From: Obrimoposthia wandeli
Lineage: Eukaryota
Direction of reading: 5' to 3'
Assembly (NCBI GenBank): GCA_977020255.1
Contig: CDROCS010003167.1
Coordinates: 1-64,000 of the forward strand
Length of the DNA stretch: 64,000 nucleotides
Every line of letters begins with the position of its first letter. The first letter of the stretch is position 1. A model generated the notes under the pieces. It saw only the letters and a list, made by a program, of their open reading frames with translations, was not told the DNA's origin and made no database searches. Positions 14,354-48,235 of the stretch are shown here, in pieces. Made by a program: the position numbers and the translations under genes.

Positions 14354-14429
14354 GAGGGAAACCACTTCCCCCTCGACCTGTAACCAATTATACAGGTCAC
14401 GAGAAAAAGAGCAACTGTTTTCGAAAACA
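14354..14429 (-). promoter_or_regulatory. shared promoter element with GTGGT-loop hairpin
   Basis: TGTTTTCGAAAACA-g-TTGCTC-16bp-TATAAT...ACAGGT..GGGAA-GTGGT-TTCCC. Confidence 0.85.
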
Positions 14430-14686
14430 ATGTTTTGTGCGTTATCCCACCAGCAGCTAATACTGCTGATTATTCGAATTTCTCACCTGTTGCTTTTATG
14501 CGATAGTGCACTAGCTATGTCCGGCCATATTATACGCGGTTATATTATACTCGGTCATTTTACGCCTCACACCGGCTTGTGGTATTATAGGTTTTCAACG
14601 AGGCGGTCCATGCTTAAACTCCAGATGAGCCATTACTTACCTCTAAATATTTTTATAACTCTATGAAATAGAAACATAAGGCTAAG

Positions 14687-15268
14687 ATGTTACAAAAAAT
14701 AAAAACAGAGAACCTATCTTCAGTTCCAAAAGAAGATGTGTTAGTAGCGGAGTGCAGTCAGCACGCGCCAAAGAAAGGTGGCTCAGTTACTCGCAGTCCG
14801 CGTAAGAAAAGAGTAAACCTCATAACCTTGGAAAAATGCAAAACAGTTGCACTGGAATTCCATACAAGAACATCATTCCAGCAAGCGGAACCACTCGTTT
14901 ACAAAACAGCAAAAGAAAACGGCTGGCTAGAGGAGTGTTATGCGCATATGCGAAAAAAGGGTGAATGGACGCTAGAAGAGTGCATCCTGAGCGCCGAAAA
15001 GTACAAAACACTTAGTCAGTGGGAAAGGGGCGCTGGTGGCAGCTTCCGTTTTGCGAAGAAAAAGGGGTGGACCAGTAAATGCACAGCCCACATGATTGTT
15101 AAGGTGTCTTGGACGAAAGAATTATGTATGGAAAGTTCTGCTGGTTTCCTTACGAAATCAGACTGGCGATGCGCAATACCCGGTGCATATCAACAAGCAT
15201 ATATCCAAGGTTGGATGAAAGAGTGCTGCAAACATATGCCAAAGCCAGCGGAAAGACGATTTAATTAG
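14687..15268 (+). CDS. protein of three ~47-aa tandem repeats (W/I-T-x-E-x-C...GW...C-x-HM)
   Basis: Repeats visible in the translation; resembles repeat domains seen in phage and homing-endonuclease-associated proteins. Confidence 0.75.
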   Translation: MLQKIKTENLSSVPKEDVLVAECSQHAPKKGGSVTRSPRKKRVNLITLEKCKTVALEFHTRTSFQQAEPLVYKTAKENGWLEECYAHMRKKGEWTLEECILSAEKYKTLSQWERGAGGSFRFAKKKGWTSKCTAHMIVKVSWTKELCMESSAGFLTKSDWRCAIPGAYQQAYIQGWMKECCKHMPKPAERRFN

Positions 15269-15369
15269 GATAGCCACTTGCGCCAACGCTATTACAGGCC
15301 ATGCCACAAGCTCTAGCAAAGTCCATAAACCATGTTGGAGCGGTTAGCTACAAGAATTAAGGTGACGAA

Positions 15370-15939
15370 ATGTCCAGAGGAAGAAAAACAAACCAGCAGA
15401 ATAGAGCTAAGCCTAACTACGAAACAGCAGTTATTGACACCAGTGCTATCTTGATTGGTTTTAAGCGTTTAGAGATTCTCTCAGGCGCAATGAGCGCCAC
15501 TAAAGATAACTATATCAAAGAGGTTCGCACTCAGATTATAACTTCTGAATTAGATAAGGAGATCTTGACGAATAAATACTTGGTCCTACATCAAGTCGCG
15601 CAAGAATGTGACTTTGCCTATTCCGGTTTCCGCCGCGGCATAAAGGTGATGGATATAGCCAGCACAAGAATTATCGCTTATTCCAGTCCAGCACTTATCG
15701 TAGCGGTAGAGTGCCTTAGAGGCCGAATGGATGCACACAAACAGCGCACTGATTACGCTAAGTTACGATTTGAGAAAAGTGTGGCAACAGGTAACGTTCG
15801 TTGCGATACTCTTTTTTCTCACTTGGAATACGGTAGATTCGAAGATACGCTTACAAGCCTTTACGACCAGATATCAGCTGGATTTGACCTGAGGCTAGCA
15901 AAGCGCTTTTATGCATCCGCAGTACGAGAAGACTTTTGA
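15370..15939 (+). CDS. hypothetical protein
   Basis: 189-aa ORF, basic N-terminus, AAGGTG RBS. Confidence 0.75.
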   Translation: MSRGRKTNQQNRAKPNYETAVIDTSAILIGFKRLEILSGAMSATKDNYIKEVRTQIITSELDKEILTNKYLVLHQVAQECDFAYSGFRRGIKVMDIASTRIIAYSSPALIVAVECLRGRMDAHKQRTDYAKLRFEKSVATGNVRCDTLFSHLEYGRFEDTLTSLYDQISAGFDLRLAKRFYASAVREDF

Positions 15940-15983
15940 CAATAATGTTATTCCTTGCTGTGAAATTGTAAACTAAAATCAAA

Positions 15984-16619
15984 ATGAAAGTGTTGGATTT
16001 GCACTCAAAGCTACAGATTGGTAAATACGCAGATGAGAATAATTTGGAAATTAAAGGTTACTTGGCCTCCGGACGGAACGGCCATGTTTACCAGACCGTC
16101 TGCGGCAAGGCATTGAAGTTGACAACTGATCTTGCTGAGGTCCATAATTCGCTTCGGTTAAGCTCGTTGTCACTGGATAATGTGGTGAATTTCTACAATT
16201 TTACTGAAGTTGGTGTTAGAGAATTCATTATAGAGATGGAACTCCTCGACACTAATGGCGTAGAGGCCACTTTTGATGAGCTAGAGTGCGCTTTGGATGA
16301 GGCGGATGGGGATTTGCTCGATTGCGAGCTTGATGGCTTTAATGTATCGCTTGAGGCCGAGAAAATGCTAGTAGATCTTAAAGCCGCCGTAGCTGACGCT
16401 GGTTCTTACAAAGTAGCACTTACGGATATCCATGAGGGAAATATCGGCCGAACTGCTTCAGGTGATTATAAGGTTTTTGATCAGCGGACGTTGAACATGA
16501 GTGATGTGAAATTAATGAACCAACTTAGCTCCATGCACGATGACTTTAAGCTATGCAAAAAAGAAGCAGTTCCAGCTGTTGAGCTGTCCAGTTCTCTGCC
16601 AGCTAAGAATGCGTTATAG
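15984..16619 (+). CDS. protein kinase-like fold protein
   Basis: Gly loop LASGRNGHVY, ALK lysine, catalytic TDIHEGNI and VFD metal-binding motif. Confidence 0.7.
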   Translation: MKVLDLHSKLQIGKYADENNLEIKGYLASGRNGHVYQTVCGKALKLTTDLAEVHNSLRLSSLSLDNVVNFYNFTEVGVREFIIEMELLDTNGVEATFDELECALDEADGDLLDCELDGFNVSLEAEKMLVDLKAAVADAGSYKVALTDIHEGNIGRTASGDYKVFDQRTLNMSDVKLMNQLSSMHDDFKLCKKEAVPAVELSSSLPAKNAL

Positions 16620-16694
16620 GTGACATAGCCAAAGAGACAAGCCGCTAACAAAGGTTGTGACGGCTTAGTCTCAGAGTCGCTAGCGGAGGTTAGC

Positions 16695-19169: not shown

Positions 19170-19212
19170 ATTATACAGAGCACCCTGATAATAGCAACTG
19201 TTTTTGAAAACA
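19170..19212 (-). promoter_or_regulatory. shared promoter element (no hairpin)
   Basis: TGTTTTCAAAAACA-g-TTGCTA-16bp-TATAAT. Confidence 0.8.
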
Positions 19213-19632: not shown

Positions 19633-20226
19633 CTAATCACGATAAACATCTTCTGACTCGTTGAACGGTTCACTCCGGTCAAATGTGATGCCACCAGAAA
19701 CAATGCCAACTCTAGCCGCCTCGGGAAGATCGCAGTGATTAGCTGAACTTTGCGACACGCAATCAATAACTGTATGTTTGAACATTTCCGCACAGCAATC
19801 TTCTAGTGATGAAGCCCAAGGTCTTGGATTTGGGTTCTCAGGAATAAGAATATCTCTTACAGACTGAACCATGTCATCAGTTAGGCTTTCGTTAAGGAAT
19901 AGGCGTAAGTTAGCTTTAATGCTTAGCTCTATGTCATCTCGAGTCAACCTGACACCTGTAGTGAAGCTTTGATCTGCGTCAGGCACGTAGAGATCAATGT
20001 TAAGGATAGCATCATCATTCGTTATAGTTTCTTTAACCACTTGCATTTCTATAGCTGGATCCGCTTCATGTCGTTTTAAGGCTAGATTTTTGATAGATTT
20101 GATAAGAAAGTCTAATTCGAATGGGTCATCATCGAGTAATGAATTATAAATCGAATTGATAACTTCGTTCGACATATAGCTTTTTACTGCTATGTGCAGT
20201 GTAACTGGAAGAGATATGATTAACAT
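19633..20226 (-). CDS. hypothetical protein
   Basis: 197-aa ORF behind a shared promoter element. Confidence 0.7.
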   Translation of the reverse strand: MLIISLPVTLHIAVKSYMSNEVINSIYNSLLDDDPFELDFLIKSIKNLALKRHEADPAIEMQVVKETITNDDAILNIDLYVPDADQSFTTGVRLTRDDIELSIKANLRLFLNESLTDDMVQSVRDILIPENPNPRPWASSLEDCCAEMFKHTVIDCVSQSSANHCDLPEAARVGIVSGGITFDRSEPFNESEDVYRD

Positions 20227-20250
20227 ATTGATACTTAACCTTTTACTTTA

Positions 20251-20323
20251 GAGAGGTACCACACCTCTCTACCTGTAGCTATAATAACACGGGGTTACTT
20301 TAATGCAAGTGTTTTTGAAAACA
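20251..20323 (-). promoter_or_regulatory. shared promoter element with GTGGT-loop hairpin
   Basis: TGTTTTCAAAAACA-c-TTGCAT-16bp-TATTAT-AGCTACAGGT-GAGAGGT-GTGGT-ACCTCTC. Confidence 0.85.
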
Positions 20324-22213: not shown

Positions 22214-22618
22214 TTAGGCGTCAAAGTCAGCCCAGTCTGTCATCGTTAGAACTTTTAGTGTCCCATCCACATTAATGACATCACCCATTGATGTACTAGA
22301 CAAAAATGCGTCTGCATTAATTTCCGTGATGCAATCTTGCTCAGCCCAGTGACAATCAGGGTCTTCAACGTTAATGTTTGTTTTTCTAAACAAATCGCTC
22401 TTACGTTCACATTCAATTTTGAATGCTTCACAGAAGTATTCTTTTGGAAGTTTAATCGCAAGCTTGGCTAGTTTGATTTGTGATTCATCATCAAAAGTGA
22501 ATCGCTTTGCGTTGAACACTTCTTCTAGTTGAGGTGTTGCTGAAATAGAGTAGTTATGAAAGTCTGCATACTTTTCCATAAAAATACGAGTGAAGCGGTA
22601 GTTAATTACTTTTTTCAT
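22214..22618 (-). CDS. YodL-like domain protein
   Basis: C-terminal SSTSMGDVINVDG resembles the YodL S.SVGDV..DG signature. Confidence 0.5.
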   Translation of the reverse strand: MKKVINYRFTRIFMEKYADFHNYSISATPQLEEVFNAKRFTFDDESQIKLAKLAIKLPKEYFCEAFKIECERKSDLFRKTNINVEDPDCHWAEQDCITEINADAFLSSTSMGDVINVDGTLKVLTMTDWADFDA

Positions 22619-22644: not shown

Positions 22645-22719
22645 TCGGCGGTACCACACCCCCGAAACCTGTAGCTATATTACCACAGTAAGCTTCAATG
22701 TAAAGCGTTTTCGAAAACA
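22645..22719 (-). promoter_or_regulatory. shared promoter element with GTGGT-loop hairpin
   Basis: TGTTTTCGAAAAC-gc-TTTACA-16bp-TAATAT-AGCTACAGGT-TCGGGGGT-GTGGT-ACCGCCGA. Confidence 0.85.
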
Positions 22720-22841
22720 AATGTCATTATCTAAAACAGAGTAATAAGTGATCAGTTTCGTCTGCTCCAAAAGTAGGCTGGATTGATATTGGCCACTATA
22801 GTGGTAATATAGCTCGCACATATCCAAACTTGGTTTAATTT

Positions 22842-23357: not shown

Positions 23358-23444
23358 CCTAGTTAATTAAGCGAACCTCAACAAGATTTACCAATGCTAG
23401 AATAGAGAGCCAGCAAGCCTTACAACGTGGTATTATAGGTTGTA

Positions 23445-26178: not shown

Positions 26179-26251
26179 TGTTTTTGAAAACACTTGCGCG
26201 GAAGCGCTATTGTGTTATTATAGCCACAGGTTGAAGAAACGTGGTGTTTCT
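26179..26251 (+). promoter_or_regulatory. shared promoter element with GTGGT-loop hairpin
   Basis: TGTTTTTGAAAACA-c-TTGCGC-16bp-TATTAT-AGCCACAGGT..AGAAAC-GTGGT-GTTTCT. Confidence 0.85.
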
Positions 26252-26279
26252 CAAAAGTATTATTAGGCAGGTCAATAAC

Positions 26280-26522
26280 ATGAAAGAATTAATCGCGTTT
26301 ACAATCAAACAAAACGTTCTGCAAGATCTGTTTGGTGAGCCGCAGTATCCAGTCGAGCCAACACTGCTAACGAAAAAACAAAAGCAAGATTTAGGTTGGG
26401 CAATCGAGGGGCAATTATCGCCTGAGAACCTTGGTTGCGATGGTGAAATTAGCGTGTTGAGTGCTCGAAGCAAGGAGCGCTTACTTAACACAGTAAAAGA
26501 CCAATTGGACGCTCTGCAGTAG
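26280..26522 (+). CDS. small hypothetical protein (LSPENLGCDGE motif)
   Basis: The track ORF starts at 26241, inside the hairpin; ATG at 26280 is the more likely start. Confidence 0.7.
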   Translation: MKELIAFTIKQNVLQDLFGEPQYPVEPTLLTKKQKQDLGWAIEGQLSPENLGCDGEISVLSARSKERLLNTVKDQLDALQ

Positions 26523-32803: not shown

Positions 32804-32807
32804 TTTA

Positions 32808-32836
32808 TTAGTTTAGTTTAGTTTAGTTTAGTTTAG
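32808..32836. repeat. (GTTTA)n microsatellite immediately upstream of the adhesin C start
   Basis: Five full GTTTA units at 32811-32835. Confidence 0.9.
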
Positions 32837-32870
32837 CTAATTACAAGAAATCCCTTGCGATTCCATATGA

Positions 32871-34550
32871 TTAAATTTTCTTACAAATAGTGAGTACGAT
32901 CCCACGAGCTGTAATATCTACCGCTGCGCCGCTACCAGCACTGCTAGTGGTGGCCGATACGCTCCCAGTCCAGCCCTTATTCCCCCCTTTGTGAGGGTAA
33001 CCACCTTGGTGACTATTATTGTAATACGTATAGTTATGACTATGGTTGGGTAAGTTCGCAGCCAAAAATCTAAAAGAATTACTTCCGACAGTTCTCCCCG
33101 TAGTGGCTGTAGAAGTGCTGCCACCAGTAGTGTTTGGTTGGTATAAAAACCCTTGCTGAGCAATACTAGTAATACTAGAACGAGGCATTGCATCGGTAAA
33201 TCCACTCGGACAGCTTCGGCTGCGCGTATAAATTAGGCCACCAACGGGGTGAACACCCTTAATTTGCCATACCTTGTTCTGACAGGCCATTATTATACCC
33301 TTGCTATTTGTTGATATGGCTCCATTAACTGTGCAAGAACTCATCTCACTTTTACTGCCAGTTTTTATAGTTCCCACTCTTACGGTTCCATCAGTTTTTA
33401 GCGAAGGAGTTTGGTAGGTATTAGCGGATAGCAAGCCGGTTAAGAGTAGATCACTTTCAGCCACAATTGATTTAGCTTTTAACTCACCTCGCAATGCTAT
33501 GTCCTCGGCAACAACCCCTAGCTCATCTGCCCGAAGGACCTCCTTTCCGTCAGAGTTAATCATCACCATGGCACCAAGTACACCAACATGATGTACCTGA
33601 AGAAAGCTGTCACTGACCTGCGTATCAAAAGGTGCAACCCCACAAAAACTGACGTCGCCAGCAGCGTTGACGCACTCAACGACGACCCCTACACTTTTAC
33701 TTGCTAACCGTATGTTTTGTGCATTAACACCGTTAATATTCATATCCAGATTCCCCCTTAAATCCCCTCCGTCAAGATTGAATCCGGGGTCAAAATCCAG
33801 ACCGCAAGGAGTTTCATTTCCTTTATCGTCGAAGCATTCCGATGGCATTGAATTGATAGCAAAGGTTAATCCGCCTATCATCCCGCTATCTCCATCCAGT
33901 CTATAAAATGCATCTAAACTTGTTGATAATTTAGGGAGTATCAATTCCGCTCGGATAGCACAAGTTAAGCCTCCAATTAAACACGATTGCACATCCGTCT
34001 GGTTACCGCTACGATCTACGATTGTATATTGGTAGCGCCCCGTCATTTGTAGGTTAGAGTGACTCTTTGCTGAGTTAAGGGTTTCATTTGCGAAACGCAA
34101 AAATTCATTTTGACGATCAGGCTGGGAGTGGTAAATATCCAAGGCCCACGAGTTTAACCCACCGACCGACTCAACCTTTAGATCCATGATCGCATTCATA
34201 GGGCTGTTATTCCAAAAATCACAACCAATCAATGCAACATCTTCATTTCCCGCTACGACGGGATCCCAAGATCCTGCGCATGTGTTATGCTTTTCACCTA
34301 TTAGGCTATCATGCAATTCATCAACAACAGAAACGCCTGAAATATCAACGTTCCAATTTATGTTTTTTCGTCCGTCTAACAAGACCCTACGGTCGACAGC
34401 GTGAAGCAGAGTGGCAAGTTCCTTGCCAGTCTGCCTTGCCACCACGCGAGCATCCTCTCTAATGTTTAAGTTGATTAGCATAAGCGTGCAGGCCGAAACA
34501 AGTAACGCCGCTAAAATCGCCTCAAACAATATAAATCCGATTCGTTTCAT
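32871..34550 (-). CDS. PilV-like prepilin adhesin B with tail-fibre-like C-terminus
   Basis: MKRIG|FILFE; SCTVNGAISTNSKGIIMACQNKVW; SCPSGF; NLPNHSH; ends ICKKI. Confidence 0.75.
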   Translation of the reverse strand: MKRIGFILFEAILAALLVSACTLMLINLNIREDARVVARQTGKELATLLHAVDRRVLLDGRKNINWNVDISGVSVVDELHDSLIGEKHNTCAGSWDPVVAGNEDVALIGCDFWNNSPMNAIMDLKVESVGGLNSWALDIYHSQPDRQNEFLRFANETLNSAKSHSNLQMTGRYQYTIVDRSGNQTDVQSCLIGGLTCAIRAELILPKLSTSLDAFYRLDGDSGMIGGLTFAINSMPSECFDDKGNETPCGLDFDPGFNLDGGDLRGNLDMNINGVNAQNIRLASKSVGVVVECVNAAGDVSFCGVAPFDTQVSDSFLQVHHVGVLGAMVMINSDGKEVLRADELGVVAEDIALRGELKAKSIVAESDLLLTGLLSANTYQTPSLKTDGTVRVGTIKTGSKSEMSSCTVNGAISTNSKGIIMACQNKVWQIKGVHPVGGLIYTRSRSCPSGFTDAMPRSSITSIAQQGFLYQPNTTGGSTSTATTGRTVGSNSFRFLAANLPNHSHNYTYYNNSHQGGYPHKGGNKGWTGSVSATTSSAGSGAAVDITARGIVLTICKKI

Positions 34551-34598
34551 TTTTAATTTTTAATTTTTAATTTTTAATTTTTAATTTTTAATTTTTAA
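34550..34598. repeat. (TTTTTAA)7 microsatellite spanning the adhesin A stop and adhesin B start
   Basis: Seven perfect 7-bp units. Confidence 0.95.
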
Positions 34599-36285
34599 CG
34601 CAATATAACAACTTTAAGTAACCCGGCTGAACATTTATCGGAGCTGACCCTCCAGCGTAGGCCGTATAAGAACCAACATAACTCGTCATTCCTTTCAGAG
34701 AGGCACCGCCGCCATATCTTATAAATGCATTTTGAAGAATCGGTTTTGTGTATTTATGTGAGTGCGCTGGCATCGTACTCTCGGTCATTCGTATAGAGGT
34801 GACACCTACAGCCTGCTCAACTCTTGAAGCAGGGCCAGAGACAACAGCAGTTCCGGCAGAATTTAACTTTGAATATGAACTCCATCCAGATGGGCAAGTA
34901 GTAGAAGCAAAAGCAGTTACAGTATTTGGCTCTATTGCTCCCATTTCAGTCCACCGATTATTAACGCAACTCATTACGCGGCCAGAAGCTCCTGCGGCAA
35001 TGGCGTTATCCGAGCAACTTTGGCCCACCACTTGATTCGCAGATAGATTGTACTGAGCCGCCTTAATTCTCTTATCGTCAATATACATTGTCTGAGCACT
35101 TAATTGTCCGCTAGATTTTAGCTTGCCATTCACGGTAAGGGTTTCACTCGCGATTGTCTTGCCAGTTACAGTTAAGCCTTGAGCGCTCAATTTATTCATT
35201 TTAACATCAGCCCCTTTAGTTACCTCAAAGATACGGTCAAAGCCGTTAGAGCTGACAACTTCCATTGTTCCATCAGCAACAACCCCTTTAAACGCGGAGC
35301 GCATCTTTAGAGGATTTGTAAGCAAGGAGAATCCGCAGTTAATTTCTTTATTTGCTTCATCCCTGCATAACGTCTCTGTAACTTGGCCGGAACTAATTAA
35401 TGATAATTCCGATATTCTGGTGTTATCATTGTAAACATTGACCTGCCCTGTACTGGCATCGAAGTCAATCCCACAAGGTGTCTTATCGCCTTTGTGATCT
35501 AAGCATTGAGAAGGCATTGTGCTGGAAAAGTGAAATTTGAGCCCAACCTCCATTTCGTTCCCTCCGTCGGAACGTAAGTATGTATAACGCCCACTAGCAG
35601 ATAGATATGGTTTGTAATCAAACAAAATCCCGCACTTAACATCACTTATACATAAGGCCATATTGACCTCACGCATAGTCGCTGTATCGACTAGTCTGGC
35701 CCTAATGTCGCCACTAACAGTGAAAACATTTTTCTTGGTGAACCCCTTGATGATATGGCTGTAAAACTTAGTATACTTCGCTCTATCACTTGAATCGTCA
35801 TGATAAAGCATGACAGTCCAGTCATTTACTACCTTATCATTATCGGCTGTTACATTACGTTCGGCGTACGCTGAGAAAGAGAATGGGAACGCCTGCTCTT
35901 CAGTTGGAAATGTACCGCAAGGCAATAGATCTGATGTTGAAAACTTATCATGGTCTGGGTATTTAGGATGCCACCCGTAAGCTTTCCCGCACGAAGGGTT
36001 CTTGTAGCCAACCAACTCCTCACCAAACAACCCGTCTAAAACTGATTGTGTGCTTGACCACCTCTGCAACAGAGAGCTGTCACTAAAATAGCCGTCCAAA
36101 GAATGCCTCCTGTCAATGGCTGCCATCGCAGAATGCATGTTAGCGCCGAGATTTTCAGCAGAAACCTGAACCCTCAAGTTCTCTTCACTCGTCAATCGCA
36201 AAACCTGTGAAGCTGTAAATATGGTCATAGCTAACATGAGTTCGATAATTGTGAATCCTTGACTATGTTTTTTAAACGTGATCAT
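34588..36285 (-). CDS. PilV-like prepilin adhesin A with tail-fibre-like C-terminus
   Basis: HSQG|FTIIE; SCSDNAIAAGASGRVMSCVNNRW; FASTTCPSGW; TMPAHSH; ends YCVKN. Confidence 0.75.
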   Translation of the reverse strand: MITFKKHSQGFTIIELMLAMTIFTASQVLRLTSEENLRVQVSAENLGANMHSAMAAIDRRHSLDGYFSDSSLLQRWSSTQSVLDGLFGEELVGYKNPSCGKAYGWHPKYPDHDKFSTSDLLPCGTFPTEEQAFPFSFSAYAERNVTADNDKVVNDWTVMLYHDDSSDRAKYTKFYSHIIKGFTKKNVFTVSGDIRARLVDTATMREVNMALCISDVKCGILFDYKPYLSASGRYTYLRSDGGNEMEVGLKFHFSSTMPSQCLDHKGDKTPCGIDFDASTGQVNVYNDNTRISELSLISSGQVTETLCRDEANKEINCGFSLLTNPLKMRSAFKGVVADGTMEVVSSNGFDRIFEVTKGADVKMNKLSAQGLTVTGKTIASETLTVNGKLKSSGQLSAQTMYIDDKRIKAAQYNLSANQVVGQSCSDNAIAAGASGRVMSCVNNRWTEMGAIEPNTVTAFASTTCPSGWSSYSKLNSAGTAVVSGPASRVEQAVGVTSIRMTESTMPAHSHKYTKPILQNAFIRYGGGASLKGMTSYVGSYTAYAGGSAPINVQPGYLKLLYCVKN

Positions 36286-36392
36286 TTTTATTAGATTTTA
36301 CAACTTTCAGATTGTTAAAAGAAGTTGTGGAAGGAGATTATTGAGTTACCGATAGTAAAAGATAAGCCTCGGTCATTATAAGTCGATGGAAA

Positions 36393-36442
36393 ATGAATGG
36401 AGGATGAATGGAGGATGGAGACGGTTTGGAGACGGTTTGGAG
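36393..36442. repeat. two adjacent 11-bp tandem duplications upstream of adhesin A
   Basis: (atgaatggagg)2 and (ggagacggttt)2. Confidence 0.8.
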
Positions 36443-36561
36443 TAAGTGACTTACCGCTAAAGCTAGTTTAAGCCATGTAATAATCAAGCGAAAATTCGTC
36501 CTAAAAATGTTCAAAGCGCCTGTGAACTTTGCCGATGTTCACAGGCTGTACAACTTATTTT

Positions 36562-38136
36562 TTACGGTTGAAGAATTTCTACAGTTGAATGAATATTTAC
36601 AACCTCATCATCTGCGTTGGGGAAGTATTCAATCATATTTTGCTGATCTAAGTATGCGTCAACTCGCTGGTTAGCAAGATTAAATCCACTTACAATGATT
36701 CCACCCGCATAGGTTTTAACCGAAACAATCTGCTTAAAAGTAGTGCTGAAATGTGACAAAATATTTGTATCGTGATATTGGTCAGTATTAAGATCAATAT
36801 AGGAAATCTTATCGATAACAGCCCACGAGTCACCGCCAATGTCCGCATCTTCATCACGGTTAAACACGTATGCATAGTTTGTGTCACCAACTTTTGACTC
36901 AAGGAATGTCGCGATGCTTGGCTCGGATAATGCAGTGCCAGTCAACGAAATGCAGCTACCCCCTGTCTTTTTATAGATAGGCTCGTCTTTTGAATATTCG
37001 CTCAAGCACATAACTGTGCCTCCATTGTAAATGATGCTAGCCCATGTTTTTTCTGCACCAGCTACCATGTAGGGAGTTTCTACCATTTCATTTAGGTAGC
37101 TGTCCTGACCCGTTTCCATATCAATCACCAAGCTGCCACTATTACCTTTAAGTAGTGTTGATACAATAAGTCCGTTAAGTAGGCGGGTTTGACTAACACC
37201 TGTGTGACCACGACTTAATTGAGTTTGTACCTTTGTTTTCATATCCACGCGCGCAAGAGCGCCTAAATAATCAACAATCACATAATCACCGCTAGTTACG
37301 AATATTTTCCACGGAGCAGAAGGTCTTTCTATTTCGGGGCGATCAACCGTTAAAATTTCTATTGCACCATCGTTTTTATTGTATTTAAACACGGAAGAAT
37401 CTGTGCCAGTGTCCATGCCACCAGCACGACCATAATAAACATTATCCAATGTGTCATCTATTTCTAGCGAACTGTAGCTGTAATTATACTCAGCGCCTTT
37501 TGTTGCATATGCATCTGCAATACACTCGATATCTCCAGACTCACCGTACATAGGGACACGAAGAATACTACAATTGGAGAACTCGGTTGGCTCTATAACA
37601 TCTTCATCACCAACAATTTCATCATATCCACCATCTGCATTCGCAACTCGGAAATTTAAAAACTTCCCTCGAAGGTATAAATCTGTCGTTGTTGCTACAG
37701 CATCGATAACTTCGCACTCCATTTCATCATCGGGGTGTAAATTGCTAACCTTAAAGACTGGAGCGAGCTTAGCCATGGCATTGACACCAGCCCCTACTTC
37801 TCGCATAAATAACTCGCACTGTAGAGGGGCGCGGGTTACCTCAGTGTCGGTGCTTTCTGTGGCAGCGACAGTACTAAAAGTCATTGACTTGGAATAACCT
37901 GCCTCATGGCTTGGTTTTTTTTGCGTGGCACTTGGGTCTTCAATAAAAACAAAGCGCGCAGCGTCTTGAGTTAGAATCTTTACCGAAGTCTTAGTTCGTG
38001 AACCATCGCTACCATCGCCCCCATTATTACCATTACTATCGTCATCACCACCACCGCCACATGCCGTCAGCATTAGGGCTGAGGAAATTAGTACTGCTAA
38101 CGTCTTCTTGTTCGTAATTCTTAACACCTTTCTCAT
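36562..38136 (-). CDS. lipoprotein, paralogue of 10522-12045
   Basis: Lipobox LTAC, Gly/Asp linker, and the same conserved Cys blocks. Confidence 0.85.
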   Translation of the reverse strand: MRKVLRITNKKTLAVLISSALMLTACGGGGDDDSNGNNGGDGSDGSRTKTSVKILTQDAARFVFIEDPSATQKKPSHEAGYSKSMTFSTVAATESTDTEVTRAPLQCELFMREVGAGVNAMAKLAPVFKVSNLHPDDEMECEVIDAVATTTDLYLRGKFLNFRVANADGGYDEIVGDEDVIEPTEFSNCSILRVPMYGESGDIECIADAYATKGAEYNYSYSSLEIDDTLDNVYYGRAGGMDTGTDSSVFKYNKNDGAIEILTVDRPEIERPSAPWKIFVTSGDYVIVDYLGALARVDMKTKVQTQLSRGHTGVSQTRLLNGLIVSTLLKGNSGSLVIDMETGQDSYLNEMVETPYMVAGAEKTWASIIYNGGTVMCLSEYSKDEPIYKKTGGSCISLTGTALSEPSIATFLESKVGDTNYAYVFNRDEDADIGGDSWAVIDKISYIDLNTDQYHDTNILSHFSTTFKQIVSVKTYAGGIIVSGFNLANQRVDAYLDQQNMIEYFPNADDEVVNIHSTVEILQP

Positions 38137-38387: not shown

Positions 38388-38458
38388 CTGGGGGCCACTT
38401 CCAGAACCTGTAACTATAATAACACAACATTCGACTTTTACAACTGTTTTTGAAAACA
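38388..38458 (-). promoter_or_regulatory. shared promoter element with decayed hairpin
   Basis: TGTTTTCAAAAACA-g-TTGTAA-16bp-TATTAT-AGTTACAGGT-CTGGAA-GTGGC-CCCCAG. Confidence 0.7.
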
Positions 38459-38530: not shown

Positions 38531-39022
38531 CTATTCGCTTATCGTTGATATAGCGCACTCAATCGCACGTCTAATGACTATGTTTTTTTCGCTTACGCGG
38601 TTTGTTGCATCGGTAATCTTAAATTCCTCAACCGTGCTCCAGTTGCCATAAACAACCGCAATGTAAACAGTTCCTACTACCGAGTCTGAGTTTGTTGGAT
38701 CTACTCGAGATAGACTTCCTGTAATTCCAACTGAAACAGATGCTCTAACTGACTTCGCTATTCCAGCGTGCGCCATATCGAAGGCTGTTTGGATTGAGTA
38801 CACGCCAAACTCATCGATGGTTCCTTGCTTTACGCCAAGCGCAATCTTTGCATCATTCGAGTAGGTTACGAAGGCATCAAGCATGACTTCGCTCGCACCA
38901 GATACATTTGTTATGCAGTTGGCCATACCGCCACCAGTGCACGACTCGACAGTGGTAATGATTAATTCTTTTTCTTTTAGTAGTGCGACAAGTTTTTCAG
39001 ATAATGCAGTCAGTGTTGGCAT
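38531..39022 (-). CDS. pncC: NMN amidohydrolase (CinA C-terminal / PncC family)
   Basis: ESCTGG, GAS......VTYSNDAKI.LGV, SITG and GTVYIAV motifs. Confidence 0.85.
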   Translation of the reverse strand: MPTLTALSEKLVALLKEKELIITTVESCTGGGMANCITNVSGASEVMLDAFVTYSNDAKIALGVKQGTIDEFGVYSIQTAFDMAHAGIAKSVRASVSVGITGSLSRVDPTNSDSVVGTVYIAVVYGNWSTVEEFKITDATNRVSEKNIVIRRAIECAISTISE

Positions 39023-39724: not shown

Positions 39725-39765
39725 AATAATGAATAATGAATAATGAATAATGAATAATGAATAAT
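39725..39765. repeat. (AATAATG) x ~6 microsatellite upstream of 39127-39702
   Basis: Five full units plus 6/7 of a unit. Confidence 0.9.
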
Positions 39766-39797: not shown

Positions 39798-40553
39798 CTA
39801 ATCCTTCTCGAAGCCAATAAATGATTTATCGTTAATTAATTCGTAATAATAACCGTTTAAATCACCGATAGTCTCTTTTGAAAAAAAGCCATTAAGCTCC
39901 CCACTCTTTTCACATATCTTTATCTCAACACTACCTTCGTAACCTGAGAAAGGAAATCTGCTAGACGTATAATTCTTTTTCTCATTCAGTGCAGCAATCA
40001 TACATTCTGCATACCCCTCTCCAAAATGCTCTGCCATTGCCTTACGTACGCGCTCAACTGTAATTACCTCACCCTCGTTAGGTGAACCAGCTGAAATTCG
40101 ATTCTCCCAAGGTGATTTAAGCTTGTCGGCATTTAGGCACTTGCGGATATATGTATTGGAAAAAGATGACTTCTTGGCTAATCTTCTATATTTCTCAACC
40201 GTTGCAATTTGCTTTTTATTTCGTTGATTTACTTTTTCTTCATCTGTTAATTGGCTAACAATTGACACCGATGTGATTACTGGTGAGAAGTAACTTCCCG
40301 CTTTAAACTGATTTCCTGATTTTTTTGAGCCTTTATTGTACATGCATAGGCCTGAACGATCGTGTAAAAAGAACCCTCTGGTGCCCCCATCGACTGTAAC
40401 GGCAGTTACTTCTAAGTGATTTCGCTTTGCTTCAAGGATCATCTCTTCAGCTTCCTTTTGGTAAGAAAGACCAAGAGGGAAGGTTCTTGTGCGTGTTTTA
40501 TCTTTAATTTTAAATGCTTTTGCTGCGATGAATTGTTCTTCTGTTATAGCCAT
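39798..40553 (-). CDS. basic hypothetical protein
   Basis: 251-aa ORF with GAGG RBS; N-terminus MAITEEQFIAA is shared with the neighbouring gene. Confidence 0.8.
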   Translation of the reverse strand: MAITEEQFIAAKAFKIKDKTRTRTFPLGLSYQKEAEEMILEAKRNHLEVTAVTVDGGTRGFFLHDRSGLCMYNKGSKKSGNQFKAGSYFSPVITSVSIVSQLTDEEKVNQRNKKQIATVEKYRRLAKKSSFSNTYIRKCLNADKLKSPWENRISAGSPNEGEVITVERVRKAMAEHFGEGYAECMIAALNEKKNYTSSRFPFSGYEGSVEIKICEKSGELNGFFSKETIGDLNGYYYELINDKSFIGFEKD

Positions 40554-40573: not shown

Positions 40574-40647
40574 TAAAGGTACCACACCTTTAATTTGTAA
40601 ACCCATAGTACCACAACCATCTAGAATGTAAAGTGTTTTCAAAAACA
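40574..40647 (-). promoter_or_regulatory. shared promoter element with GTGGT-loop hairpin
   Basis: TGTTTTTGAAAACA-c-TTTACA-16bp-TACTAT...TAAAGGT-GTGGT-ACCTTTA. Confidence 0.85.
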
Positions 40648-40761: not shown

Positions 40762-41031
40762 TCATTTTACGTTGTGAGTCTTTGCGTAACTGTGGATCTC
40801 ACTCAAGGCATAGCTTGCTGAGTGGCCTGCAATTGACCAGATTGGTGAATTACTCGCGATGCCATAACCAAAGGATGCATTCGAAAATGTCTCTATTCGT
40901 CCGGTTCTGGCGTCGACACCTGTAAGATCAAAACGGGCAGTGAAATTTTCCTTAAGATCATCGCTCTCAATCAACCAAGGTGGCGCGCATTGCTTTACTA
41001 CTGCGATGAATTGCTTTTCTGTTATAACCAT
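40762..41031 (-). CDS. small hypothetical protein
   Basis: 89-aa ORF starting MVITEKQFIAV, GAGG RBS. Confidence 0.7.
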   Translation of the reverse strand: MVITEKQFIAVVKQCAPPWLIESDDLKENFTARFDLTGVDARTGRIETFSNASFGYGIASNSPIWSIAGHSASYALSEIHSYAKTHNVK

Positions 41032-41051: not shown

Positions 41052-41129
41052 TAAAGGTACCACACCTTTAATTTGTAGGCGCACAATACCATAACAAAGT
41101 AAATAACAAAACAATTGTTTTCAAAAACA
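41052..41129 (-). promoter_or_regulatory. shared promoter element with GTGGT-loop hairpin (altered spacing)
   Basis: TGTTTTTGAAAACA...TAAAGGT-GTGGT-ACCTTTA; about 4 bp longer than the other copies. Confidence 0.8.
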
Positions 41130-41788: not shown

Positions 41789-42682
41789 CTACCGTGGCGG
41801 TAAGAACTTATCTTTGATTGTTCTCACTATCCATCCAGCACTTTGGCTGTAAGTTAGTTTTACGTTCTTGTCGTCAATAGGCCATTTACCATTTAACTGG
41901 TACATATCAACCATCGTTTGGTAAAGATCACTCGCATTATCCTTGATAGGCTTTAAATACCGAAGGAACTTAACAGGAATGCCAAATCTAGCTTCAGCGA
42001 TGGCGCAAGCGATGCAAGCTATCGTGTCAGTATCGCCACCAATATATAGAGCCATTCCAATGGCCTCATCAAAGCTTCTACAAGTCAGGCCTATGAAAAT
42101 AGCTTGTGGTACAGTTTTATCAGCTAATGCAGTGAACCTGTAATTCCTATGCAGCTCGTTTATATCAAAGCTGAGGTTATAGTACTCACACTCTATTCGA
42201 TGCCTAACATCTTTTGGATCTCTACCTTGTAGACAAAGATATATAGCCAATGCAGTTGCCTCCGCAGACTTGAGCCCGCTAGGAGTATTGTGTGTCGCCA
42301 CAGCGCTGGAATGAGTAAGCATTAGCAACTCTGACTCAGTTCTGGCCATAAATGCAATAGGAGCAACTCGCATTGCAGCACCATTGCCTTCCGATTTATA
42401 CGGAATAGTACCATTGCTCATCGCCCACCGCGCAAACCGAGGTCCGTAACCTATGTTAATACCGTGACCATTGCTATAGAGGTCTTTATAACGATGAAAA
42501 TGGCTAAGATAGGACTCGCTAAAGGAGCGGTTAGTTAGCATTGCATGAGCTGTTGCGCAAGTTAGTACGGAATCATCAGTAAATGATGAGCTGTTATGAA
42601 TGTATCGTTTTAAGAAAAATCCTTTCTCGTCTCTGAATTCGTAATGTGAACCACAGATATCACCTATTATCGAGCCTAACAT
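41789..42682 (-). CDS. ADP-ribosylglycohydrolase (DraG/ARH family)
   Basis: IIGDICG, FTDDSVLT, GNGAAMRVAP, GGDTDTIACIA. Confidence 0.92.
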   Translation of the reverse strand: MLGSIIGDICGSHYEFRDEKGFFLKRYIHNSSSFTDDSVLTCATAHAMLTNRSFSESYLSHFHRYKDLYSNGHGINIGYGPRFARWAMSNGTIPYKSEGNGAAMRVAPIAFMARTESELLMLTHSSAVATHNTPSGLKSAEATALAIYLCLQGRDPKDVRHRIECEYYNLSFDINELHRNYRFTALADKTVPQAIFIGLTCRSFDEAIGMALYIGGDTDTIACIACAIAEARFGIPVKFLRYLKPIKDNASDLYQTMVDMYQLNGKWPIDDKNVKLTYSQSAGWIVRTIKDKFLPPR

Positions 42683-42743: not shown

Positions 42744-42767
42744 AAAAAGGCACGCGAAGTGCCTTTT
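42744..42767 (-). terminator. intrinsic terminator
   Basis: aaaaggcac-gcgaa-gtgcctttt immediately after the 42770 stop. Confidence 0.6.
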
Positions 42768-42769
42768 CT

Positions 42770-43444
42770 TTAAAAAGTGAACACGTAATTAACACCGCCA
42801 AACACCTTGTTGAACGCTGATATGCGCCCATGGCGATTGCCTTTCTCGTCAACGCCGCCAATCTGAAAAGGTTGAACAATCTTATCAACTTCTGCGCGAG
42901 CGATTTCCGAGTCCCAAGAAATAATACTTGTGTTGTATCCATCTTTCTTAACAGAGAACTTCGCACCATTAAACGCCATCTTTAACGCCTTTCGGATATT
43001 CTTGTTGATCGATGCAGAATCGTGAGTATTACGCTTAAATTGCTCTAGATGTGCGTATTCTGCACTTACCTTGAGTGCTGCAACTTCTGCATCAAACGCT
43101 ATCGACTCAGCTGTTCTTTTTGCATCAAGACTTGCGCTATACTTCTCCGCGTTCTGGATTAATATTTCGATATCAGAGTCAGGTATTATGTCTTGCGCAT
43201 TAACCACTCCGTAACTAAGACCTGCACGCAACAAGCTTTCCGAGTACTCACCAGATGAACCATTCTCGAAAACGATATGAACATGACCACCAGAGGCTGA
43301 CACTTTCGCGTTACCTACTATCATGCTGTATCCGTTCTTGTTGCAGCGTTCGTCAACCGATGTGATAACGCCTGCGCCTGTGCCGTAAAGCGCTTGGTGG
43401 ACTTGTTGTCCGCGAATTAAAGTAGAAGAGAAATTCTTAATCAT
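42770..43444 (-). CDS. LPD29-like (polyvalent-protein-associated) domain protein
   Basis: KNIRKALKMAFNGAKFSVK...SIISW...FGGVNYVF. The track start is 43477, but ATG 43444 has the AAGGTG RBS. Confidence 0.65.
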   Translation of the reverse strand: MIKNFSSTLIRGQQVHQALYGTGAGVITSVDERCNKNGYSMIVGNAKVSASGGHVHIVFENGSSGEYSESLLRAGLSYGVVNAQDIIPDSDIEILIQNAEKYSASLDAKRTAESIAFDAEVAALKVSAEYAHLEQFKRNTHDSASINKNIRKALKMAFNGAKFSVKKDGYNTSIISWDSEIARAEVDKIVQPFQIGGVDEKGNRHGRISAFNKVFGGVNYVFTF

Positions 43445-43466: not shown

Positions 43467-43538
43467 GGAAACACCACGTTTCCAACCTGAGATCTATTAT
43501 AATGACTTCCAAGTGATAATCAAGGGTTTTCAAAAACA
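43467..43538 (-). promoter_or_regulatory. shared promoter element with GTGGT-loop hairpin
   Basis: TGTTTTTGAAAAC-cc-TTGATT-16bp-TATAAT..TCAGGTT-GGAAAC-GTGGT-GTTTCC. Confidence 0.85.
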
Positions 43539-46805: not shown

Positions 46806-46883
46806 AATTACACCTTATTATCTTGTTTCTGTTTGTGCTGGTGGTTGTTGCCTAAGTAGCTATTTCACCAGAAAAAGAGGTTG

Positions 46884-47666
46884 TTAGTAAAAACAGGTCT
46901 TTGTCTTTTCGGTCCAGCTTTTACCAATTAAATCGATGGCCTTGGCCTCGTCTATATCTGACACTCGAGAGCCTCTTGTTAGCTGCCATTTAACACCGAT
47001 TCTAGCGTTCTCGCATTGAATCATGATGGACGAAGAGATTCCTCTGCAGTTTAGGATGCCTAGTTTTTTCGCGCTCTTCGAGGTTGATGATAGCTTGGCT
47101 TTTGTGATCATACTTTCGGTAATGCGCTTAACTCTTTGTGGATCTATTCTTTCGTGCGTCAGTTTGAATTCAGCAATCTTACGGTCTGCGCTTTGCTTAG
47201 CTTTTAACGCGCTCATCTCTTCTTCTCTGCGCTGATTTCTTTCAATCTCGATACTTGCTGTAATGAGTGCCTGCTCGTTACTCTGGATATTTAGTGCCAC
47301 CAATTTGGTCAGCTGGAGGAGCTTAAGCTCTTTTTCGAACCCGACTTCAAGATCCTCATGATGTAAAATGCCGATACTTTGTGCGTTTAAGCTAGCGTGA
47401 GTCTTCGCTGAACCAGTCCCATTCTCCGAATCGATAGAGATGACAGAGTTGATGTAATGGATCTTTCGTCCGTGCTCGTCCGTAAGGCAAGCTAATACGT
47501 GTTTGCTATCGTGAGATACAGTGACCGTATACGCGTAGTCAGTGAGTTCACTCGGCATAACAACTGAGAACTGGCTACCAGCTTGAAGTTGACTTGCATC
47601 TAAAGTTGGTAGTTGAGGTTTTGTTGCTGTTAACATTATTTGGCCCATTGTTTGTTGTTGTGTCAA
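46884..47666 (-). CDS. hypothetical protein with coiled-coil segment
   Basis: 260-aa ORF. Confidence 0.7.
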   Translation of the reverse strand: MTQQQTMGQIMLTATKPQLPTLDASQLQAGSQFSVVMPSELTDYAYTVTVSHDSKHVLACLTDEHGRKIHYINSVISIDSENGTGSAKTHASLNAQSIGILHHEDLEVGFEKELKLLQLTKLVALNIQSNEQALITASIEIERNQRREEEMSALKAKQSADRKIAEFKLTHERIDPQRVKRITESMITKAKLSSTSKSAKKLGILNCRGISSSIMIQCENARIGVKWQLTRGSRVSDIDEAKAIDLIGKSWTEKTKTCFY

Positions 47667-47678
47667 TTTAGTGAGGTT

Positions 47679-48140
47679 CTAGCGTTTGATGCCTAGCTGC
47701 TTTATTTTTCGCTTTAGCAAAAAACGCCCAACTCTCTCTGCTTGAGAGGGGCCAACTATGCCACCAGCAGTGCACTCACGACCTTGTAAGTCGATCATTA
47801 GCATCTGAATTGGCTCTAGTAATTGAAGCTTAAAGTGCTCAACAAACATCTCCTCCATCAGGCTAATCTTATGCTTTAATGAAGGTAAGGCGCACGCCTC
47901 GCCTTCTTCGCCTTCAAAGGTAAGGTAGGTGCAAACAGCGTCATTAACTTCCTTTAGTTTCCATCCTGAAAAAAACGCGCAAGGTAGTTGATCTGTAAAA
48001 TCCTCGATCGCAGAGGCTAAATCGTTATAACCAAGTTCTTGGTACGTTTCGTCAAAGCCTGAGCTTAGGCGGGAGTAGCATGACGCAATTAGCGATAAGC
48101 TATGATTGTTAGTTGATTCTAGATTTTTGAACATTGACAT
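47679..48140 (-). CDS. hypothetical protein
   Basis: The track start 48182 lies in the promoter hairpin region; ATG 48140 follows the GGTTAAGG RBS-like motif. Confidence 0.7.
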   Translation of the reverse strand: MSMFKNLESTNNHSLSLIASCYSRLSSGFDETYQELGYNDLASAIEDFTDQLPCAFFSGWKLKEVNDAVCTYLTFEGEEGEACALPSLKHKISLMEEMFVEHFKLQLLEPIQMLMIDLQGRECTAGGIVGPSQAERVGRFLLKRKIKQLGIKR

Positions 48141-48165
48141 ATTTTTGTGCCTTAACCATTTGTTA

Positions 48166-48235
48166 GAGGTACCACACCTCAAACCTGAATCTATAATACC
48201 ACAACGACCCGGCTACGCAATGGTTTTTGAAAACA
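48166..48235 (-). promoter_or_regulatory. shared promoter element with GTGGT-loop hairpin
   Basis: TGTTTTCAAAAAC-ca-TTGCGT-16bp-TATTAT..TCAGGTTT-GAGGT-GTGGT-ACCTC. Confidence 0.85.

What the first reader, a model, noticed from the sequence alone, without database searches (positions are those of the whole stretch)
14354..48180. Covarying GUGGU-pentaloop hairpin in eight 5' leaders: candidate new cis-regulatory RNA motif
Seen: just after the predicted TSS and a conserved (A/T)CAGGT, eight leaders carry an invariant GTGGT loop closed by stems of different sequence. They are GGGAA/TTCCC (14354), GAGAGGT/ACCTCTC (20251), TCGGGGGT/ACCGCCGA (22645), AGAAAC/GTTTCT (26235), TAAAGGT/ACCTTTA (40574, 41052), GGAAAC/GTTTCC (43467) and GAGGT/ACCTC (48166). 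A ninth copy at 38388 is decayed. Most are followed by GGT(T/C)AAG or a close variant before the RBS. Compensatory stem changes around a fixed loop indicate selection on structure. Inference: a binding site for an RNA-binding translational regulator or nuclease (analogous to CsrA GGA loops, but a different loop), or a ssDNA hairpin read during conjugative entry.
Basis: partly seen in the sequence, partly recalled or inferred. Interest (0 to 1): 0.8.

Follow-up and report, generated by a model that had tools for sequence, protein, structure and literature searches.

The report
Shared leader hairpin with GUGGU loop
Eight operons of an otherwise unknown plasmid-like element begin with the same short RNA hairpin, whose loop (GUGGU) never changes while its stem changes by compensating swaps. 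It is most likely the docking site of an unidentified regulator, and nothing like it was found in any database searched.

Summary
Nine copies (eight intact, one decayed at 38388) of a 15-24-nt stem-loop with apex GTGGT lie between a predicted sigma70 start site and the ribosome-binding site. Each copy belongs to a stereotyped ~125-nt module: TGTTTTYRAAAACA palindrome, -35, extended -10, (A/T)CAGGT, hairpin, A-rich linker, GGTYRAGG, ATG.

All eight stem pairs show changes on both sides (86% of cells paired against 62% in shuffles). The -35/-10 spacers are only 27% identical, which is random. So the fixed loop reflects selection, not recent copying. A covariance model finds only these nine sites in the window.

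All copies are co-oriented with their promoter and gene, including the single plus-strand copy. This favours an RNA or transcription-linked role.

No Rfam family matches. No relative turned up in genome, metagenome, viral, plasmid or phage collections, and the neighbouring proteins are mostly orphans.

Best reading (about 45%): an RNA operator for a sequence-specific trans-acting factor. It would add translational or stability control to a repressor-type promoter regulon of establishment or anti-defence genes, as Aca1 and Aca2 do at 5' UTR hairpins. The factor was not identified, and no transcript data were available.

I rate it a new variant of a known kind, of moderate interest.

The parts
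14353..14374 (-). Hairpin copy 1: GAGGGGGAA / GTGGT / TTCCCTC(T). It leads a 95-aa basic protein gene (14043-14330).
   Evidence: 27 bits, E 8.9e-6
20250..20270 (-). Hairpin copy 2: AGAGAGGT / GTGGT / ACCTCTCT. It leads a 197-aa gene (19633-20226).
   Evidence: 32.3 bits, E 1.6e-7
22645..22665 (-). Hairpin copy 3: TCGGGGGT / GTGGT / ACCGCCGA, with one G/G mismatch. It leads a 134-aa gene (22214-22618).
   Evidence: 29.2 bits
26231..26254 (+). Hairpin copy 4, the only plus-strand copy: TTGAAGAAAC / GTGGT / GTTTCTCAA, with a bulged A. It leads an 80-aa gene (26280-26522).
   Evidence: 25.7 bits
38388..38404 (-). Decayed copy: CTGGAA / GTGGC / CCCCAG. It is followed by a ~250-nt leader and the lipoprotein plus prepilin-like operon (36562-38136 onward).
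   Evidence: 21.1 bits, E 7.6e-4
40574..40592 (-). Hairpin copy 5: TAAAGGT / GTGGT / ACCTTTA. It leads a 251-aa gene (39798-40553), with the CinA-domain gene further downstream.
   Evidence: 28.7 bits
41052..41070 (-). Hairpin copy 6, a duplicate of copy 5 with the same stem. It leads an 89-aa gene (40762-41031).
   Evidence: 26.3 bits
43467..43483 (-). Hairpin copy 7: GGAAAC / GTGGT / GTTTCC. It leads the LPD29-domain gene (42770-43444), followed by the ADP-ribosylglycohydrolase gene (41789-42682).
   Evidence: 28.7 bits
48166..48180 (-). Hairpin copy 8: GAGGT / GTGGT / ACCTC. It leads a 153-aa gene (47679-48140) and four further genes.
   Evidence: 30.3 bits
14416..14429 (.). Palindrome TGTTTTCGAAAACA, ending 2 nt before the -35 of module 1. 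Equivalent boxes lie at 20310-20323, 22706-22719, 26179-26192, 38445-38458, 40634-40647, 41116-41129, 43525-43538 and 48222-48235.
   Evidence: promoter scans pick up the -35/-10 pairs
10253..10266 (+). Same promoter type without the hairpin; drives 10522-12045. Further hairpin-less members lie at 19199-19212 (-) and 63295-63308 (+).
20236..20242 (-). Example of the second conserved leader box, GGTTAAG (GGTYRAG), just upstream of or overlapping the Shine-Dalgarno. It is present in 6 of 8 hairpin leaders and in 0 of 62 other genes.

Best explanation
The hairpin is a selected element at the 5' end of the mRNA. It has a 5-9-bp stem of free sequence and an invariant apex GUGGU, probably a UGG triloop closed by a G.U pair. 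It starts 3-6 nt after the predicted start site and ends 20-26 nt before the AUG, in leaders only 43-52 nt long. I read it as the RNA operator of one sequence-specific trans-acting factor. That factor is most likely a protein of the element itself. It would recognise the loop and probably also the second conserved box, GGUYRAGG, next to the Shine-Dalgarno 13-19 nt downstream. Binding would set ribosome access and/or the lifetime of all eight leader mRNAs together. This post-transcriptional layer would sit on top of transcriptional control through the TGTTTTYRAAAACA palindrome shared by the same promoters. The result would be a two-level regulon for small orphan and anti-defence-like genes of a plasmid-like element. 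Shown here: the motif, its covariation, its placement, its orientation and its absence from known families. Inferred: that it acts as RNA, that a factor binds it, and the direction of the effect.
For: All 8 stem pairs covary and shuffled or slid controls fail. An independent alifold gives the same helix. The loop is identical in 8 of 8 intact copies, while the -35/-10 spacers of the same modules are 27% identical, which is random; the loop is therefore conserved as strongly as the promoter hexamers. All 9 copies are co-oriented with promoter and gene, including the plus-strand copy at 26231-26254. The covariance model finds no copy outside a leader. 5' arms are 47/60 purine in every copy, a strand asymmetry that a double-stranded palindromic site would not need. 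GGTYRAG occurs only in hairpin leaders, and the loop-to-box spacing fits two-site binding. The downstream genes are unrelated to one another, so what is conserved is a regulatory cassette rather than a gene family. There is precedent: Aca2 and Aca1 bind both promoter DNA and 5' UTR hairpins of anti-defence operons (PMC13551039). Repressor-controlled multi-promoter establishment regulons are also known, namely Reg576 (PMC6294495) and ArdK/CUP (PMC6289460).
Against: No candidate RNA-binding protein was found. Pfam, PHROGs and NCBIfam are blank for nearly all genes. The 95-aa basic protein gave only a low-confidence generic ferredoxin-like model. There are no transcript data, so the start sites are predictions. 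No orthologous elements exist to test conservation beyond the seven independent paralogous copies. Aca-type motifs conserve the stem sequence, whereas here only the loop is fixed. Three to four promoters of the same family work without the hairpin.
Confidence: 0.45

Rival explanations
1. The hairpin is a factor-independent 5' stabiliser or translation enhancer. It hinders 5'-end-dependent decay and RNase E scanning. The repeated (A/U)GGU elements at +1, in the loop and before the Shine-Dalgarno act as extra anti-SD-like ribosome landing sites, giving a fast burst of expression.
For: The hairpin is strictly 5'-terminal and never internal. Leaders are short and uniform. (A/U)GGU recurs at +1, in the loop and before the SD. 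5' hairpins are known to stabilise mRNAs (ompA and T7 gene 10 leaders; from my own knowledge). Leading regions of plasmids are reported to be tuned for translation (PMC13478746).
Against: A stabiliser needs a stem, not five invariant loop bases. The 3-6 unpaired 5' nucleotides exceed what classic 5' protection tolerates (my own knowledge). Several stems are weak, with leader folding energies of -6 to -8 kcal/mol.
Confidence: 0.2
2. The hairpin is a single-stranded DNA hairpin used while the element is single-stranded, during conjugative entry or rolling-circle replication. It would serve as a priming signal or a hairpin-type promoter for a transferred primase or polymerase, as in ssi sites or phage N4 hairpin promoters.
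For: 8 of 9 copies lie on one DNA strand. Six Chi-containing 11-mers also all lie on that strand, suggesting a polar replicon. The gene content is compatible with a conjugative or mobile element. Variable stems with a fixed loop fit recognition of a folded single strand.
Against: The plus-strand copy is inverted together with its promoter and gene. Every copy sits at a fixed place between the -10 and the SD, and none lies elsewhere in 64 kb. There is no long Frpo-like fold that would rebuild -35/-10 in single-stranded DNA. No relaxase, primase or N4-like polymerase was detected in the window.
Confidence: 0.1
3. The hairpin is a nut/boxB-like loading site. A pentaloop hairpin in the nascent leader recruits an elongation or antitermination factor so that RNA polymerase reads through terminators inside the operons.
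For: It is a promoter-proximal pentaloop hairpin with conserved flanks. A good terminator-like hairpin (42744-42768, minus strand) lies between the first and second gene of the 43467 operon. LoaP and lambda N bind leader hairpins (my own knowledge).
Against: No boxA-like sequence is present in any leader. The loop is not GNRA-like. Terminator-like sites are no more frequent than in shuffles. Two modules drive single short genes. No N-, Q- or NusG-like protein was detected.
Confidence: 0.08
4. The partner is an RNA. The loop kisses a complementary ACCAC loop of an element-encoded small RNA. Alternatively its UGGU pairs with the 3' ACCA end of tRNA, as the UGGN bulge of T-box leaders does.
For: UGGU is the exact complement of ACCA-3'. 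Conserved loops with free stems are typical of antisense-RNA kissing targets (my own knowledge). A hipBA module lies next to copy 1.
Against: No candidate small RNA with ACCAC in a loop was found, other than the antisense of the leaders themselves. Four to five base pairs in a 5-nt loop is weak. No T-box architecture is present, and there is no Rfam hit even at E<=10.
Confidence: 0.07
5. The element is read as double-stranded DNA. GTGGT at about +15 to +20 mimics the family's own extended -10 (TGTGGTA) and causes a sigma70-dependent promoter-proximal pause, or it serves as a second operator.
For: Class I apexes (GGTGTGGTACC) repeat the TGTGGTA seen in the extended -10 of about half the family.
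Against: Only GTGGT is invariant. The would-be -10 hexamer lacks A-11 in classes II and III and T-7 in most copies. The distance from the real -10 varies from 17 to 21 nt. A double-stranded site does not explain compensatory stems.
Confidence: 0.05

Closest known systems
Aca2/Aca1 5' UTR RNA motifs of anti-CRISPR operons (PMC13551039)
   Same: A mobile-element regulon in which the promoter carries an inverted-repeat operator and the leader between operator and start codon carries a conserved, covarying hairpin. The hairpin is bound by the regulator and blocks ribosome access. Neighbouring anti-defence operons share the motifs.
   Different: In Aca motifs the stem sequence is conserved and is read like the DNA half-site by an HTH domain. 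Here the stems are free and only the loop is fixed. No HTH or Aca gene was found in the operons. There are eight to nine operons in one element rather than one or two.
CsrA/RsmA binding sites
   Same: A short hairpin presents a G-rich loop. A second conserved G-rich site at the Shine-Dalgarno lies 13-19 nt away, within the spacing a dimer can bridge.
   Different: The defining GGA is absent: the loop is GUGGU and the box is GGUYRAGG. No CsrA-family protein was detected in the window.
Lambda-type nut boxB hairpins
   Same: A promoter-proximal 5-bp-class stem with a 5-nt loop, variable stem, fixed loop and conserved flanks.
   Different: There is no boxA and no GNRA-like loop. Eight sites instead of two. 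The operons are mostly short. No N-like protein was identified.
Phage coat-protein and RegA-type translational operators (MS2, PP7)
   Same: A small hairpin just upstream of the ribosome-binding site, recognised through its loop bases.
   Different: Those systems have one operator per genome and usually include the SD or AUG in the hairpin. Here the SD is outside the hairpin and the site is repeated across the regulon.
IncN CUP/ArdK, IncP kor and p576 Reg576 establishment regulons (PMC6289460, PMC6294495)
   Same: Many promoters of early or establishment genes on one plasmid share an operator for one repressor.
   Different: R46 CUP repeats are 90-99% identical over 100-300 bp. Here only the functional positions are conserved. 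The sources I read do not mention a leader RNA hairpin for those systems.
T-box leader (UGGN bulge)
   Same: UGGU could pair with the tRNA 3' ACCA end. Class I apexes even read UGGUACC.
   Different: There is no Stem I, no specifier and no terminator/antiterminator. Leaders are 43-52 nt. No Rfam T-box hit. The host type appears to be Gram-negative.

Membership tests
Any Rfam 15 family | Match to a curated covariance model | tested here: not met
   No hit at gathering score over the window. No hit at any hairpin site at E<=10 over 14000-48500.
CsrA/Rsm target site | GGA in the hairpin loop and at the SD-proximal site | tested here: not met
   The loop is GUGGU in 8 of 8 copies. GGA occurs 0-1 times per leader and never in the loop.
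CsrA/Rsm target site | CsrA-family protein available in cis | tested here: not met
   No CsrA Pfam hit among about 60 window proteins scanned. A host CsrA cannot be checked.
Lambda nut (boxA + boxB) | boxA-like CGCUCUUUA upstream of the hairpin | tested here: not met
   No match with up to 2 mismatches in any leader.
Lambda nut (boxA + boxB) | GNRA-like pentaloop (GAAAA or GACAA) | tested here: not met
   The loop is GUGGU.
Aca-type dual DNA/RNA control | Inverted-repeat operator at the promoter plus a covarying hairpin between operator and start codon | tested here: met
   The palindrome abuts the -35. The hairpin covaries.
Aca-type dual DNA/RNA control | Stem sequence conserved and resembling the DNA half-site; HTH regulator encoded in the operon | tested here: not met
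   Stems differ in every independent copy. No HTH protein in the hairpin operons by Pfam.
T-box riboswitch | Stem I with specifier loop, and terminator/antiterminator with a UGGN bulge | tested here: not met
   Leaders are 43-52 nt with a single helix. No Rfam hit. Only UGGU is shared.
Intrinsic terminator or attenuator | G+C-rich hairpin followed by a U run | tested here: not met
   No run of 4 or more T within 10 nt after any stem. None of the copies is listed by the terminator scan.
Frpo/ssi single-strand promoters of leading regions | Long imperfect hairpin that rebuilds -35/-10 in single-stranded DNA, on the transferred strand only | tested here: not met
   The hairpin is 15-24 nt and lies downstream of an ordinary -35/-10. 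One copy is on the other strand. Transfer polarity itself is not testable here.
Repressor-controlled establishment regulon (CUP/kor/Reg576 type) - applies to the promoters | Shared operator at many promoters of one element | tested here: met
   12 promoters carry the palindrome at a fixed distance from the -35. The repressor was not identified.

The most novel reading that the evidence does not exclude
The loop's UGGU pairs with the free 3' ACCA end of uncharged tRNA, as the T-box bulge UGGN does. The hairpin would then be a minimal tRNA-end sensor in a Gram-negative mobile element, tying expression of its establishment regulon to the translational state of the cell. A hipBA module, whose toxin family raises uncharged tRNA, sits next to one copy.
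Probability: 0.03. Interest if true: 0.9.

Novelty: new variant of a known kind. Interest (0 to 1): 0.55.

Why it matters
If a factor reads this loop, eight operons of one mobile element are controlled at two levels: a DNA operator and an RNA operator. That arrangement has so far been shown only for single anti-CRISPR operons. The motif is small, has natural compensatory variants and comes in seven independent copies, so it is ready for reporter and pull-down tests. It could also lead to a new RNA-binding specificity and help assign function to a block of orphan, probably anti-defence, genes. Its reach is limited for now, because it is known from this one element only.

Tried and rejected
**Searches for relatives, all negative**
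- A promoter-only pattern in genome contigs gave 108 single chance hits, none with a hairpin.
- A promoter-plus-loop pattern in metagenome contigs gave 17 chance hits. Three identical AT-rich loci looked promoter-like but have no GTGGT hairpin and no second copy.
- Two viral-contig scans gave only chance hits.
- Megablast and blastn of 7-8 kb and of one module against plasmids and phages found nothing. A 24-nt hit in E. coli plasmids (E 0.9) is chance.
- The LPD29 protein and the 524-aa lipoprotein have no homologues in 5.8 billion proteins.
- The ADP-ribosylglycohydrolase has its best hits, 47-52% identical, on Vibrio contigs. I fetched two of those contigs, and also a V. penaeicida plasmid region found with the 251-aa protein. 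All three lack both the palindrome and the hairpin.
- No analogous enriched loop exists in those loci.

**Factor hunt**
- Pfam, PHROGs and NCBIfam on about 70 proteins, and one atlas search, gave nothing RNA-binding.
- The AlphaFold model of the 95-aa basic protein has pLDDT 67 and a generic beta-alpha-beta-beta-alpha-beta fold. Its best matches are PII-like proteins at TM about 0.5, which is uninformative.

**Other checks that led nowhere**
- A search for a small RNA carrying ACCAC found none beyond the antisense of the leaders.
- Single-sequence folding z-scores are not significant.
- IncN CUP repeats were inspected as a possible homologue. They are long, near-identical repeats of a different kind.
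- A literature search for GUGGU hairpins found nothing relevant.

**Transcript evidence**
- The look-up of sequencing runs returned only the source DNA sample.


Full report
**What is there**

The window (41.5% G+C, no N) carries a family of at least twelve promoters with one architecture.
- A 14-bp palindrome TGTTTTYRAAAACA (13 matches against 0.67 expected) ends two bases before a -35 TTGnnn.
- A 16-17-bp spacer follows, then an extended -10 (TGnTAtTAT).
- Then comes (A/T)CAGGT, where a sigma70 start site is expected. The simple promoter scan picks up several of the same -35/-10 pairs.

In eight of these modules, and in decayed form in a ninth, the CAGGT is followed within 0-3 nt by an inverted repeat around GTGGT. 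Minor additions: 14354 extends to 8 pairs with one G.U, 22645 has an internal G/G mismatch, and 26235 has a bulged A.

**Is it more than chance or recent copying?**

- On a gap-free, loop-anchored alignment of the nine copies, 86% of cells pair against 62% in column shuffles (0 of 500 reach it). Registers slid by 1-3 columns pair at 57% or less. All eight pairs carry double-sided changes.
- An independent MAFFT alignment of whole leaders, folded by RNAalifold, gives the same single helix. It has 7 of 8 compensatory pairs and an invariant G.U that could close a UGG triloop.
- The -35/-10 spacers of the same modules are 27% identical pairwise, which is saturated. Palindrome, hexamers, CAGGT and the loop are conserved. 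The loop is therefore under selection of the same order as the promoter elements.
- The downstream genes are unrelated to one another, except for the duplicated pair at 40574 and 41052. That leaves seven independent intact copies.
- A covariance model built from the alignment finds exactly the nine copies in 64 kb on both strands (E 1.6e-7 to 7.6e-4). The next hit has E 0.23.

**Anatomy**

| Feature | Value |
|---|---|
| Predicted leader length | 43-52 nt |
| Unpaired 5' nucleotides ((C)AGGU...) | 3-6 nt |
| Hairpin length | 15-24 nt |
| End of hairpin to ATG | 20-26 nt |
| U run after the stem | none |
| Purines in 5' arms | 47 of 60 |

After an A-rich linker comes GGTYRAG(G). It is present in 6 of 8 hairpin leaders and in none of 62 other upstream regions of the window. 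Its 3' half is the Shine-Dalgarno (UAAGG, UGAGG or CAAGG). Its 5' GGU is specific to hairpin leaders; hairpin-less family members have AATTAAGG at that position.

The RNA motif is therefore bipartite: loop GUGGU plus (A/U)GGUYRAGG, 13-19 nt apart.

All nine copies are co-oriented with promoter and gene, and the one plus-strand module (26179-26290) is inverted as a whole. No copy occurs inside an operon or away from a promoter.

**Context**

Most proteins are orphans. Hits are:
- HipA with an HTH partner (12371-13982);
- an LPD29 polyvalent-protein domain (42770-43444);
- ADP-ribosylglycohydrolase (41789-42682);
- a CinA domain (38531-39022);
- a GNAT, a serine recombinase, an S26 peptidase and prepilin-like paralogues;
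- a weak Lar-like zinc ribbon;
- a DndB/PAPS-reductase module.

The nearest relatives of two of the proteins lie on large Vibrio and Photobacterium plasmids or Vibrio contigs, at 27-50% identity. A 56-bp x5 iteron-like array lies at 29847-30134.

I infer a large plasmid-like mobile element of a Vibrionaceae-type host, with the hairpin operons enriched in establishment or anti-defence-like genes. No relaxase or type IV secretion gene is in the window, so calling this a "leading region" is not established.

**Relatives and known families**

- Rfam gives nothing at gathering score, and nothing at the hairpin sites at E<=10.
- Pattern scans of 185,579 species genomes, JGI metagenomes and IMG/VR returned only chance hits.
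- BLAST against plasmid and phage collections found nothing.
- The distantly related Vibrio loci lack both palindrome and hairpin.
- Two element proteins have no homologue at all.

Comparative evidence is therefore limited to the paralogous copies in this window.

**Mechanism**

A fixed, asymmetric loop on stems of free sequence rules out an ordinary double-stranded DNA site. It points to a folded single strand read by a sequence-specific partner.

Orientation and the fixed place inside the promoter-to-ATG module favour RNA. My best reading (0.45) is an RNA operator for one trans-acting factor, probably an element protein. The factor would touch the loop and the GGU box at the Shine-Dalgarno, and so set translation and/or stability of all leaders together. 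This would complement transcriptional control through the palindrome.

The closest documented system is Aca2/Aca1, which bind both promoter DNA and 5' UTR hairpins of anti-defence operons and extend to neighbouring operons (PMC13551039). Multi-promoter establishment regulons under one repressor are known from p576 (PMC6294495) and IncN CUP/ArdK (PMC6289460). R46 CUPs, inspected here, are long repeats 90-99% identical and are not comparable modules.

The differences from Aca motifs are real: the stems are free, only the loop is fixed, and no HTH gene was found.

The two-site geometry resembles CsrA targets, but the defining GGA is absent.

**Rivals**

- **Plain 5' stabiliser or translation enhancer (0.2).** It explains the strict 5' position. 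It does not explain five invariant loop bases, nor the 3-6 unpaired 5' nucleotides.
- **ssDNA hairpin for priming or a hairpin promoter (0.1).** It fits 8 of 9 copies on one strand. That strand also carries all six Chi-containing 11-mers. It does not fit the inverted plus-strand module or the fixed place in the leader.
- **nut-like antitermination (0.08).** One good internal terminator exists (42744-42768). But there is no boxA, terminators are not enriched, and two of the operons hold a single short gene.
- **An RNA partner (0.07).** This would be a small RNA with ACCAC, or the tRNA 3' ACCA end as in T-box UGGN. No small RNA candidate was found and there is no T-box architecture.
- **A DNA-level sigma70 pause or second operator (0.05).** It is prompted by the unexplained identity of the class I apex TGTGGTA with the family's own extended -10. 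But the rest of a -10 is missing and the spacing varies from 17 to 21 nt.

**Limits**

- Start sites are predicted, not mapped.
- The only sequencing run holding the sequence is the source DNA sample.
- The factor hunt was blank. This includes a low-confidence model of the 95-aa basic first-gene product, which shows a generic ferredoxin-like fold.

**Verdict**

This is a real, selected, previously undescribed leader hairpin motif that spans a regulon within one orphan mobile element. The mechanism is not established. I class it as a new variant of a known kind (leader RNA operators of mobile-element regulons) and score interest at 0.55.

The scan's separate note on the 12-member promoter family (s1-204552) agrees with what I found.

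Noticed in passing
window 29847-30134: A 56-bp unit repeated 5.1 times (95% matches) in a 525-nt gene-free gap next to an AAA-type ATPase gene (28361-29785). It looks like iterons or a centromere, so it may be the element's origin or partition site.
   Followed up: partly
window 32808-32836, 34545-34598, 39725-39765, 63029-63062: Perfect short tandem repeats (5-mer x5.8, 7-mer x7.7, 7-mer x5.9, 6-mer x5.7) abut or overlap the start codons of prepilin-like and other genes. They are candidates for slipped-strand phase variation.
   Followed up: no
window 31049-38136 and 10522-12045, 49073-54278: Two paralogous sets of three ~560-aa proteins with a prepilin-type N-terminus, 42-43% identical pairwise in the same order. 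Each set has a partner lipoprotein paralogue (34% identical). All are otherwise orphan proteins.
   Followed up: partly
window + coordinates 2645, 8561, 20988, 21768, 25682, 27728: The 11-mer TGCTGGTGGAT, which contains the E. coli Chi octamer, occurs six times. All six are on the minus strand, which suggests a polar replicon.
   Followed up: no
window 7040-7110 (-), 22783-22810 (+), 23420-23440 (+): Further, more diverged promoters share the family's extended -10 (GTGGTAWTATAG) but lack the palindrome at the usual place and the hairpin. The same GTGGTA also forms the apex of class I hairpins; this is unexplained.
   Followed up: partly
window 12371-13982: A hipB-like HTH gene and a hipA kinase gene converge on the first hairpin operon.
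   Followed up: no
window 42744-42768 (-): A strong terminator-like hairpin with a T run lies between the LPD29 gene and the ADP-ribosylglycohydrolase gene, inside a hairpin-led operon.
   Followed up: partly
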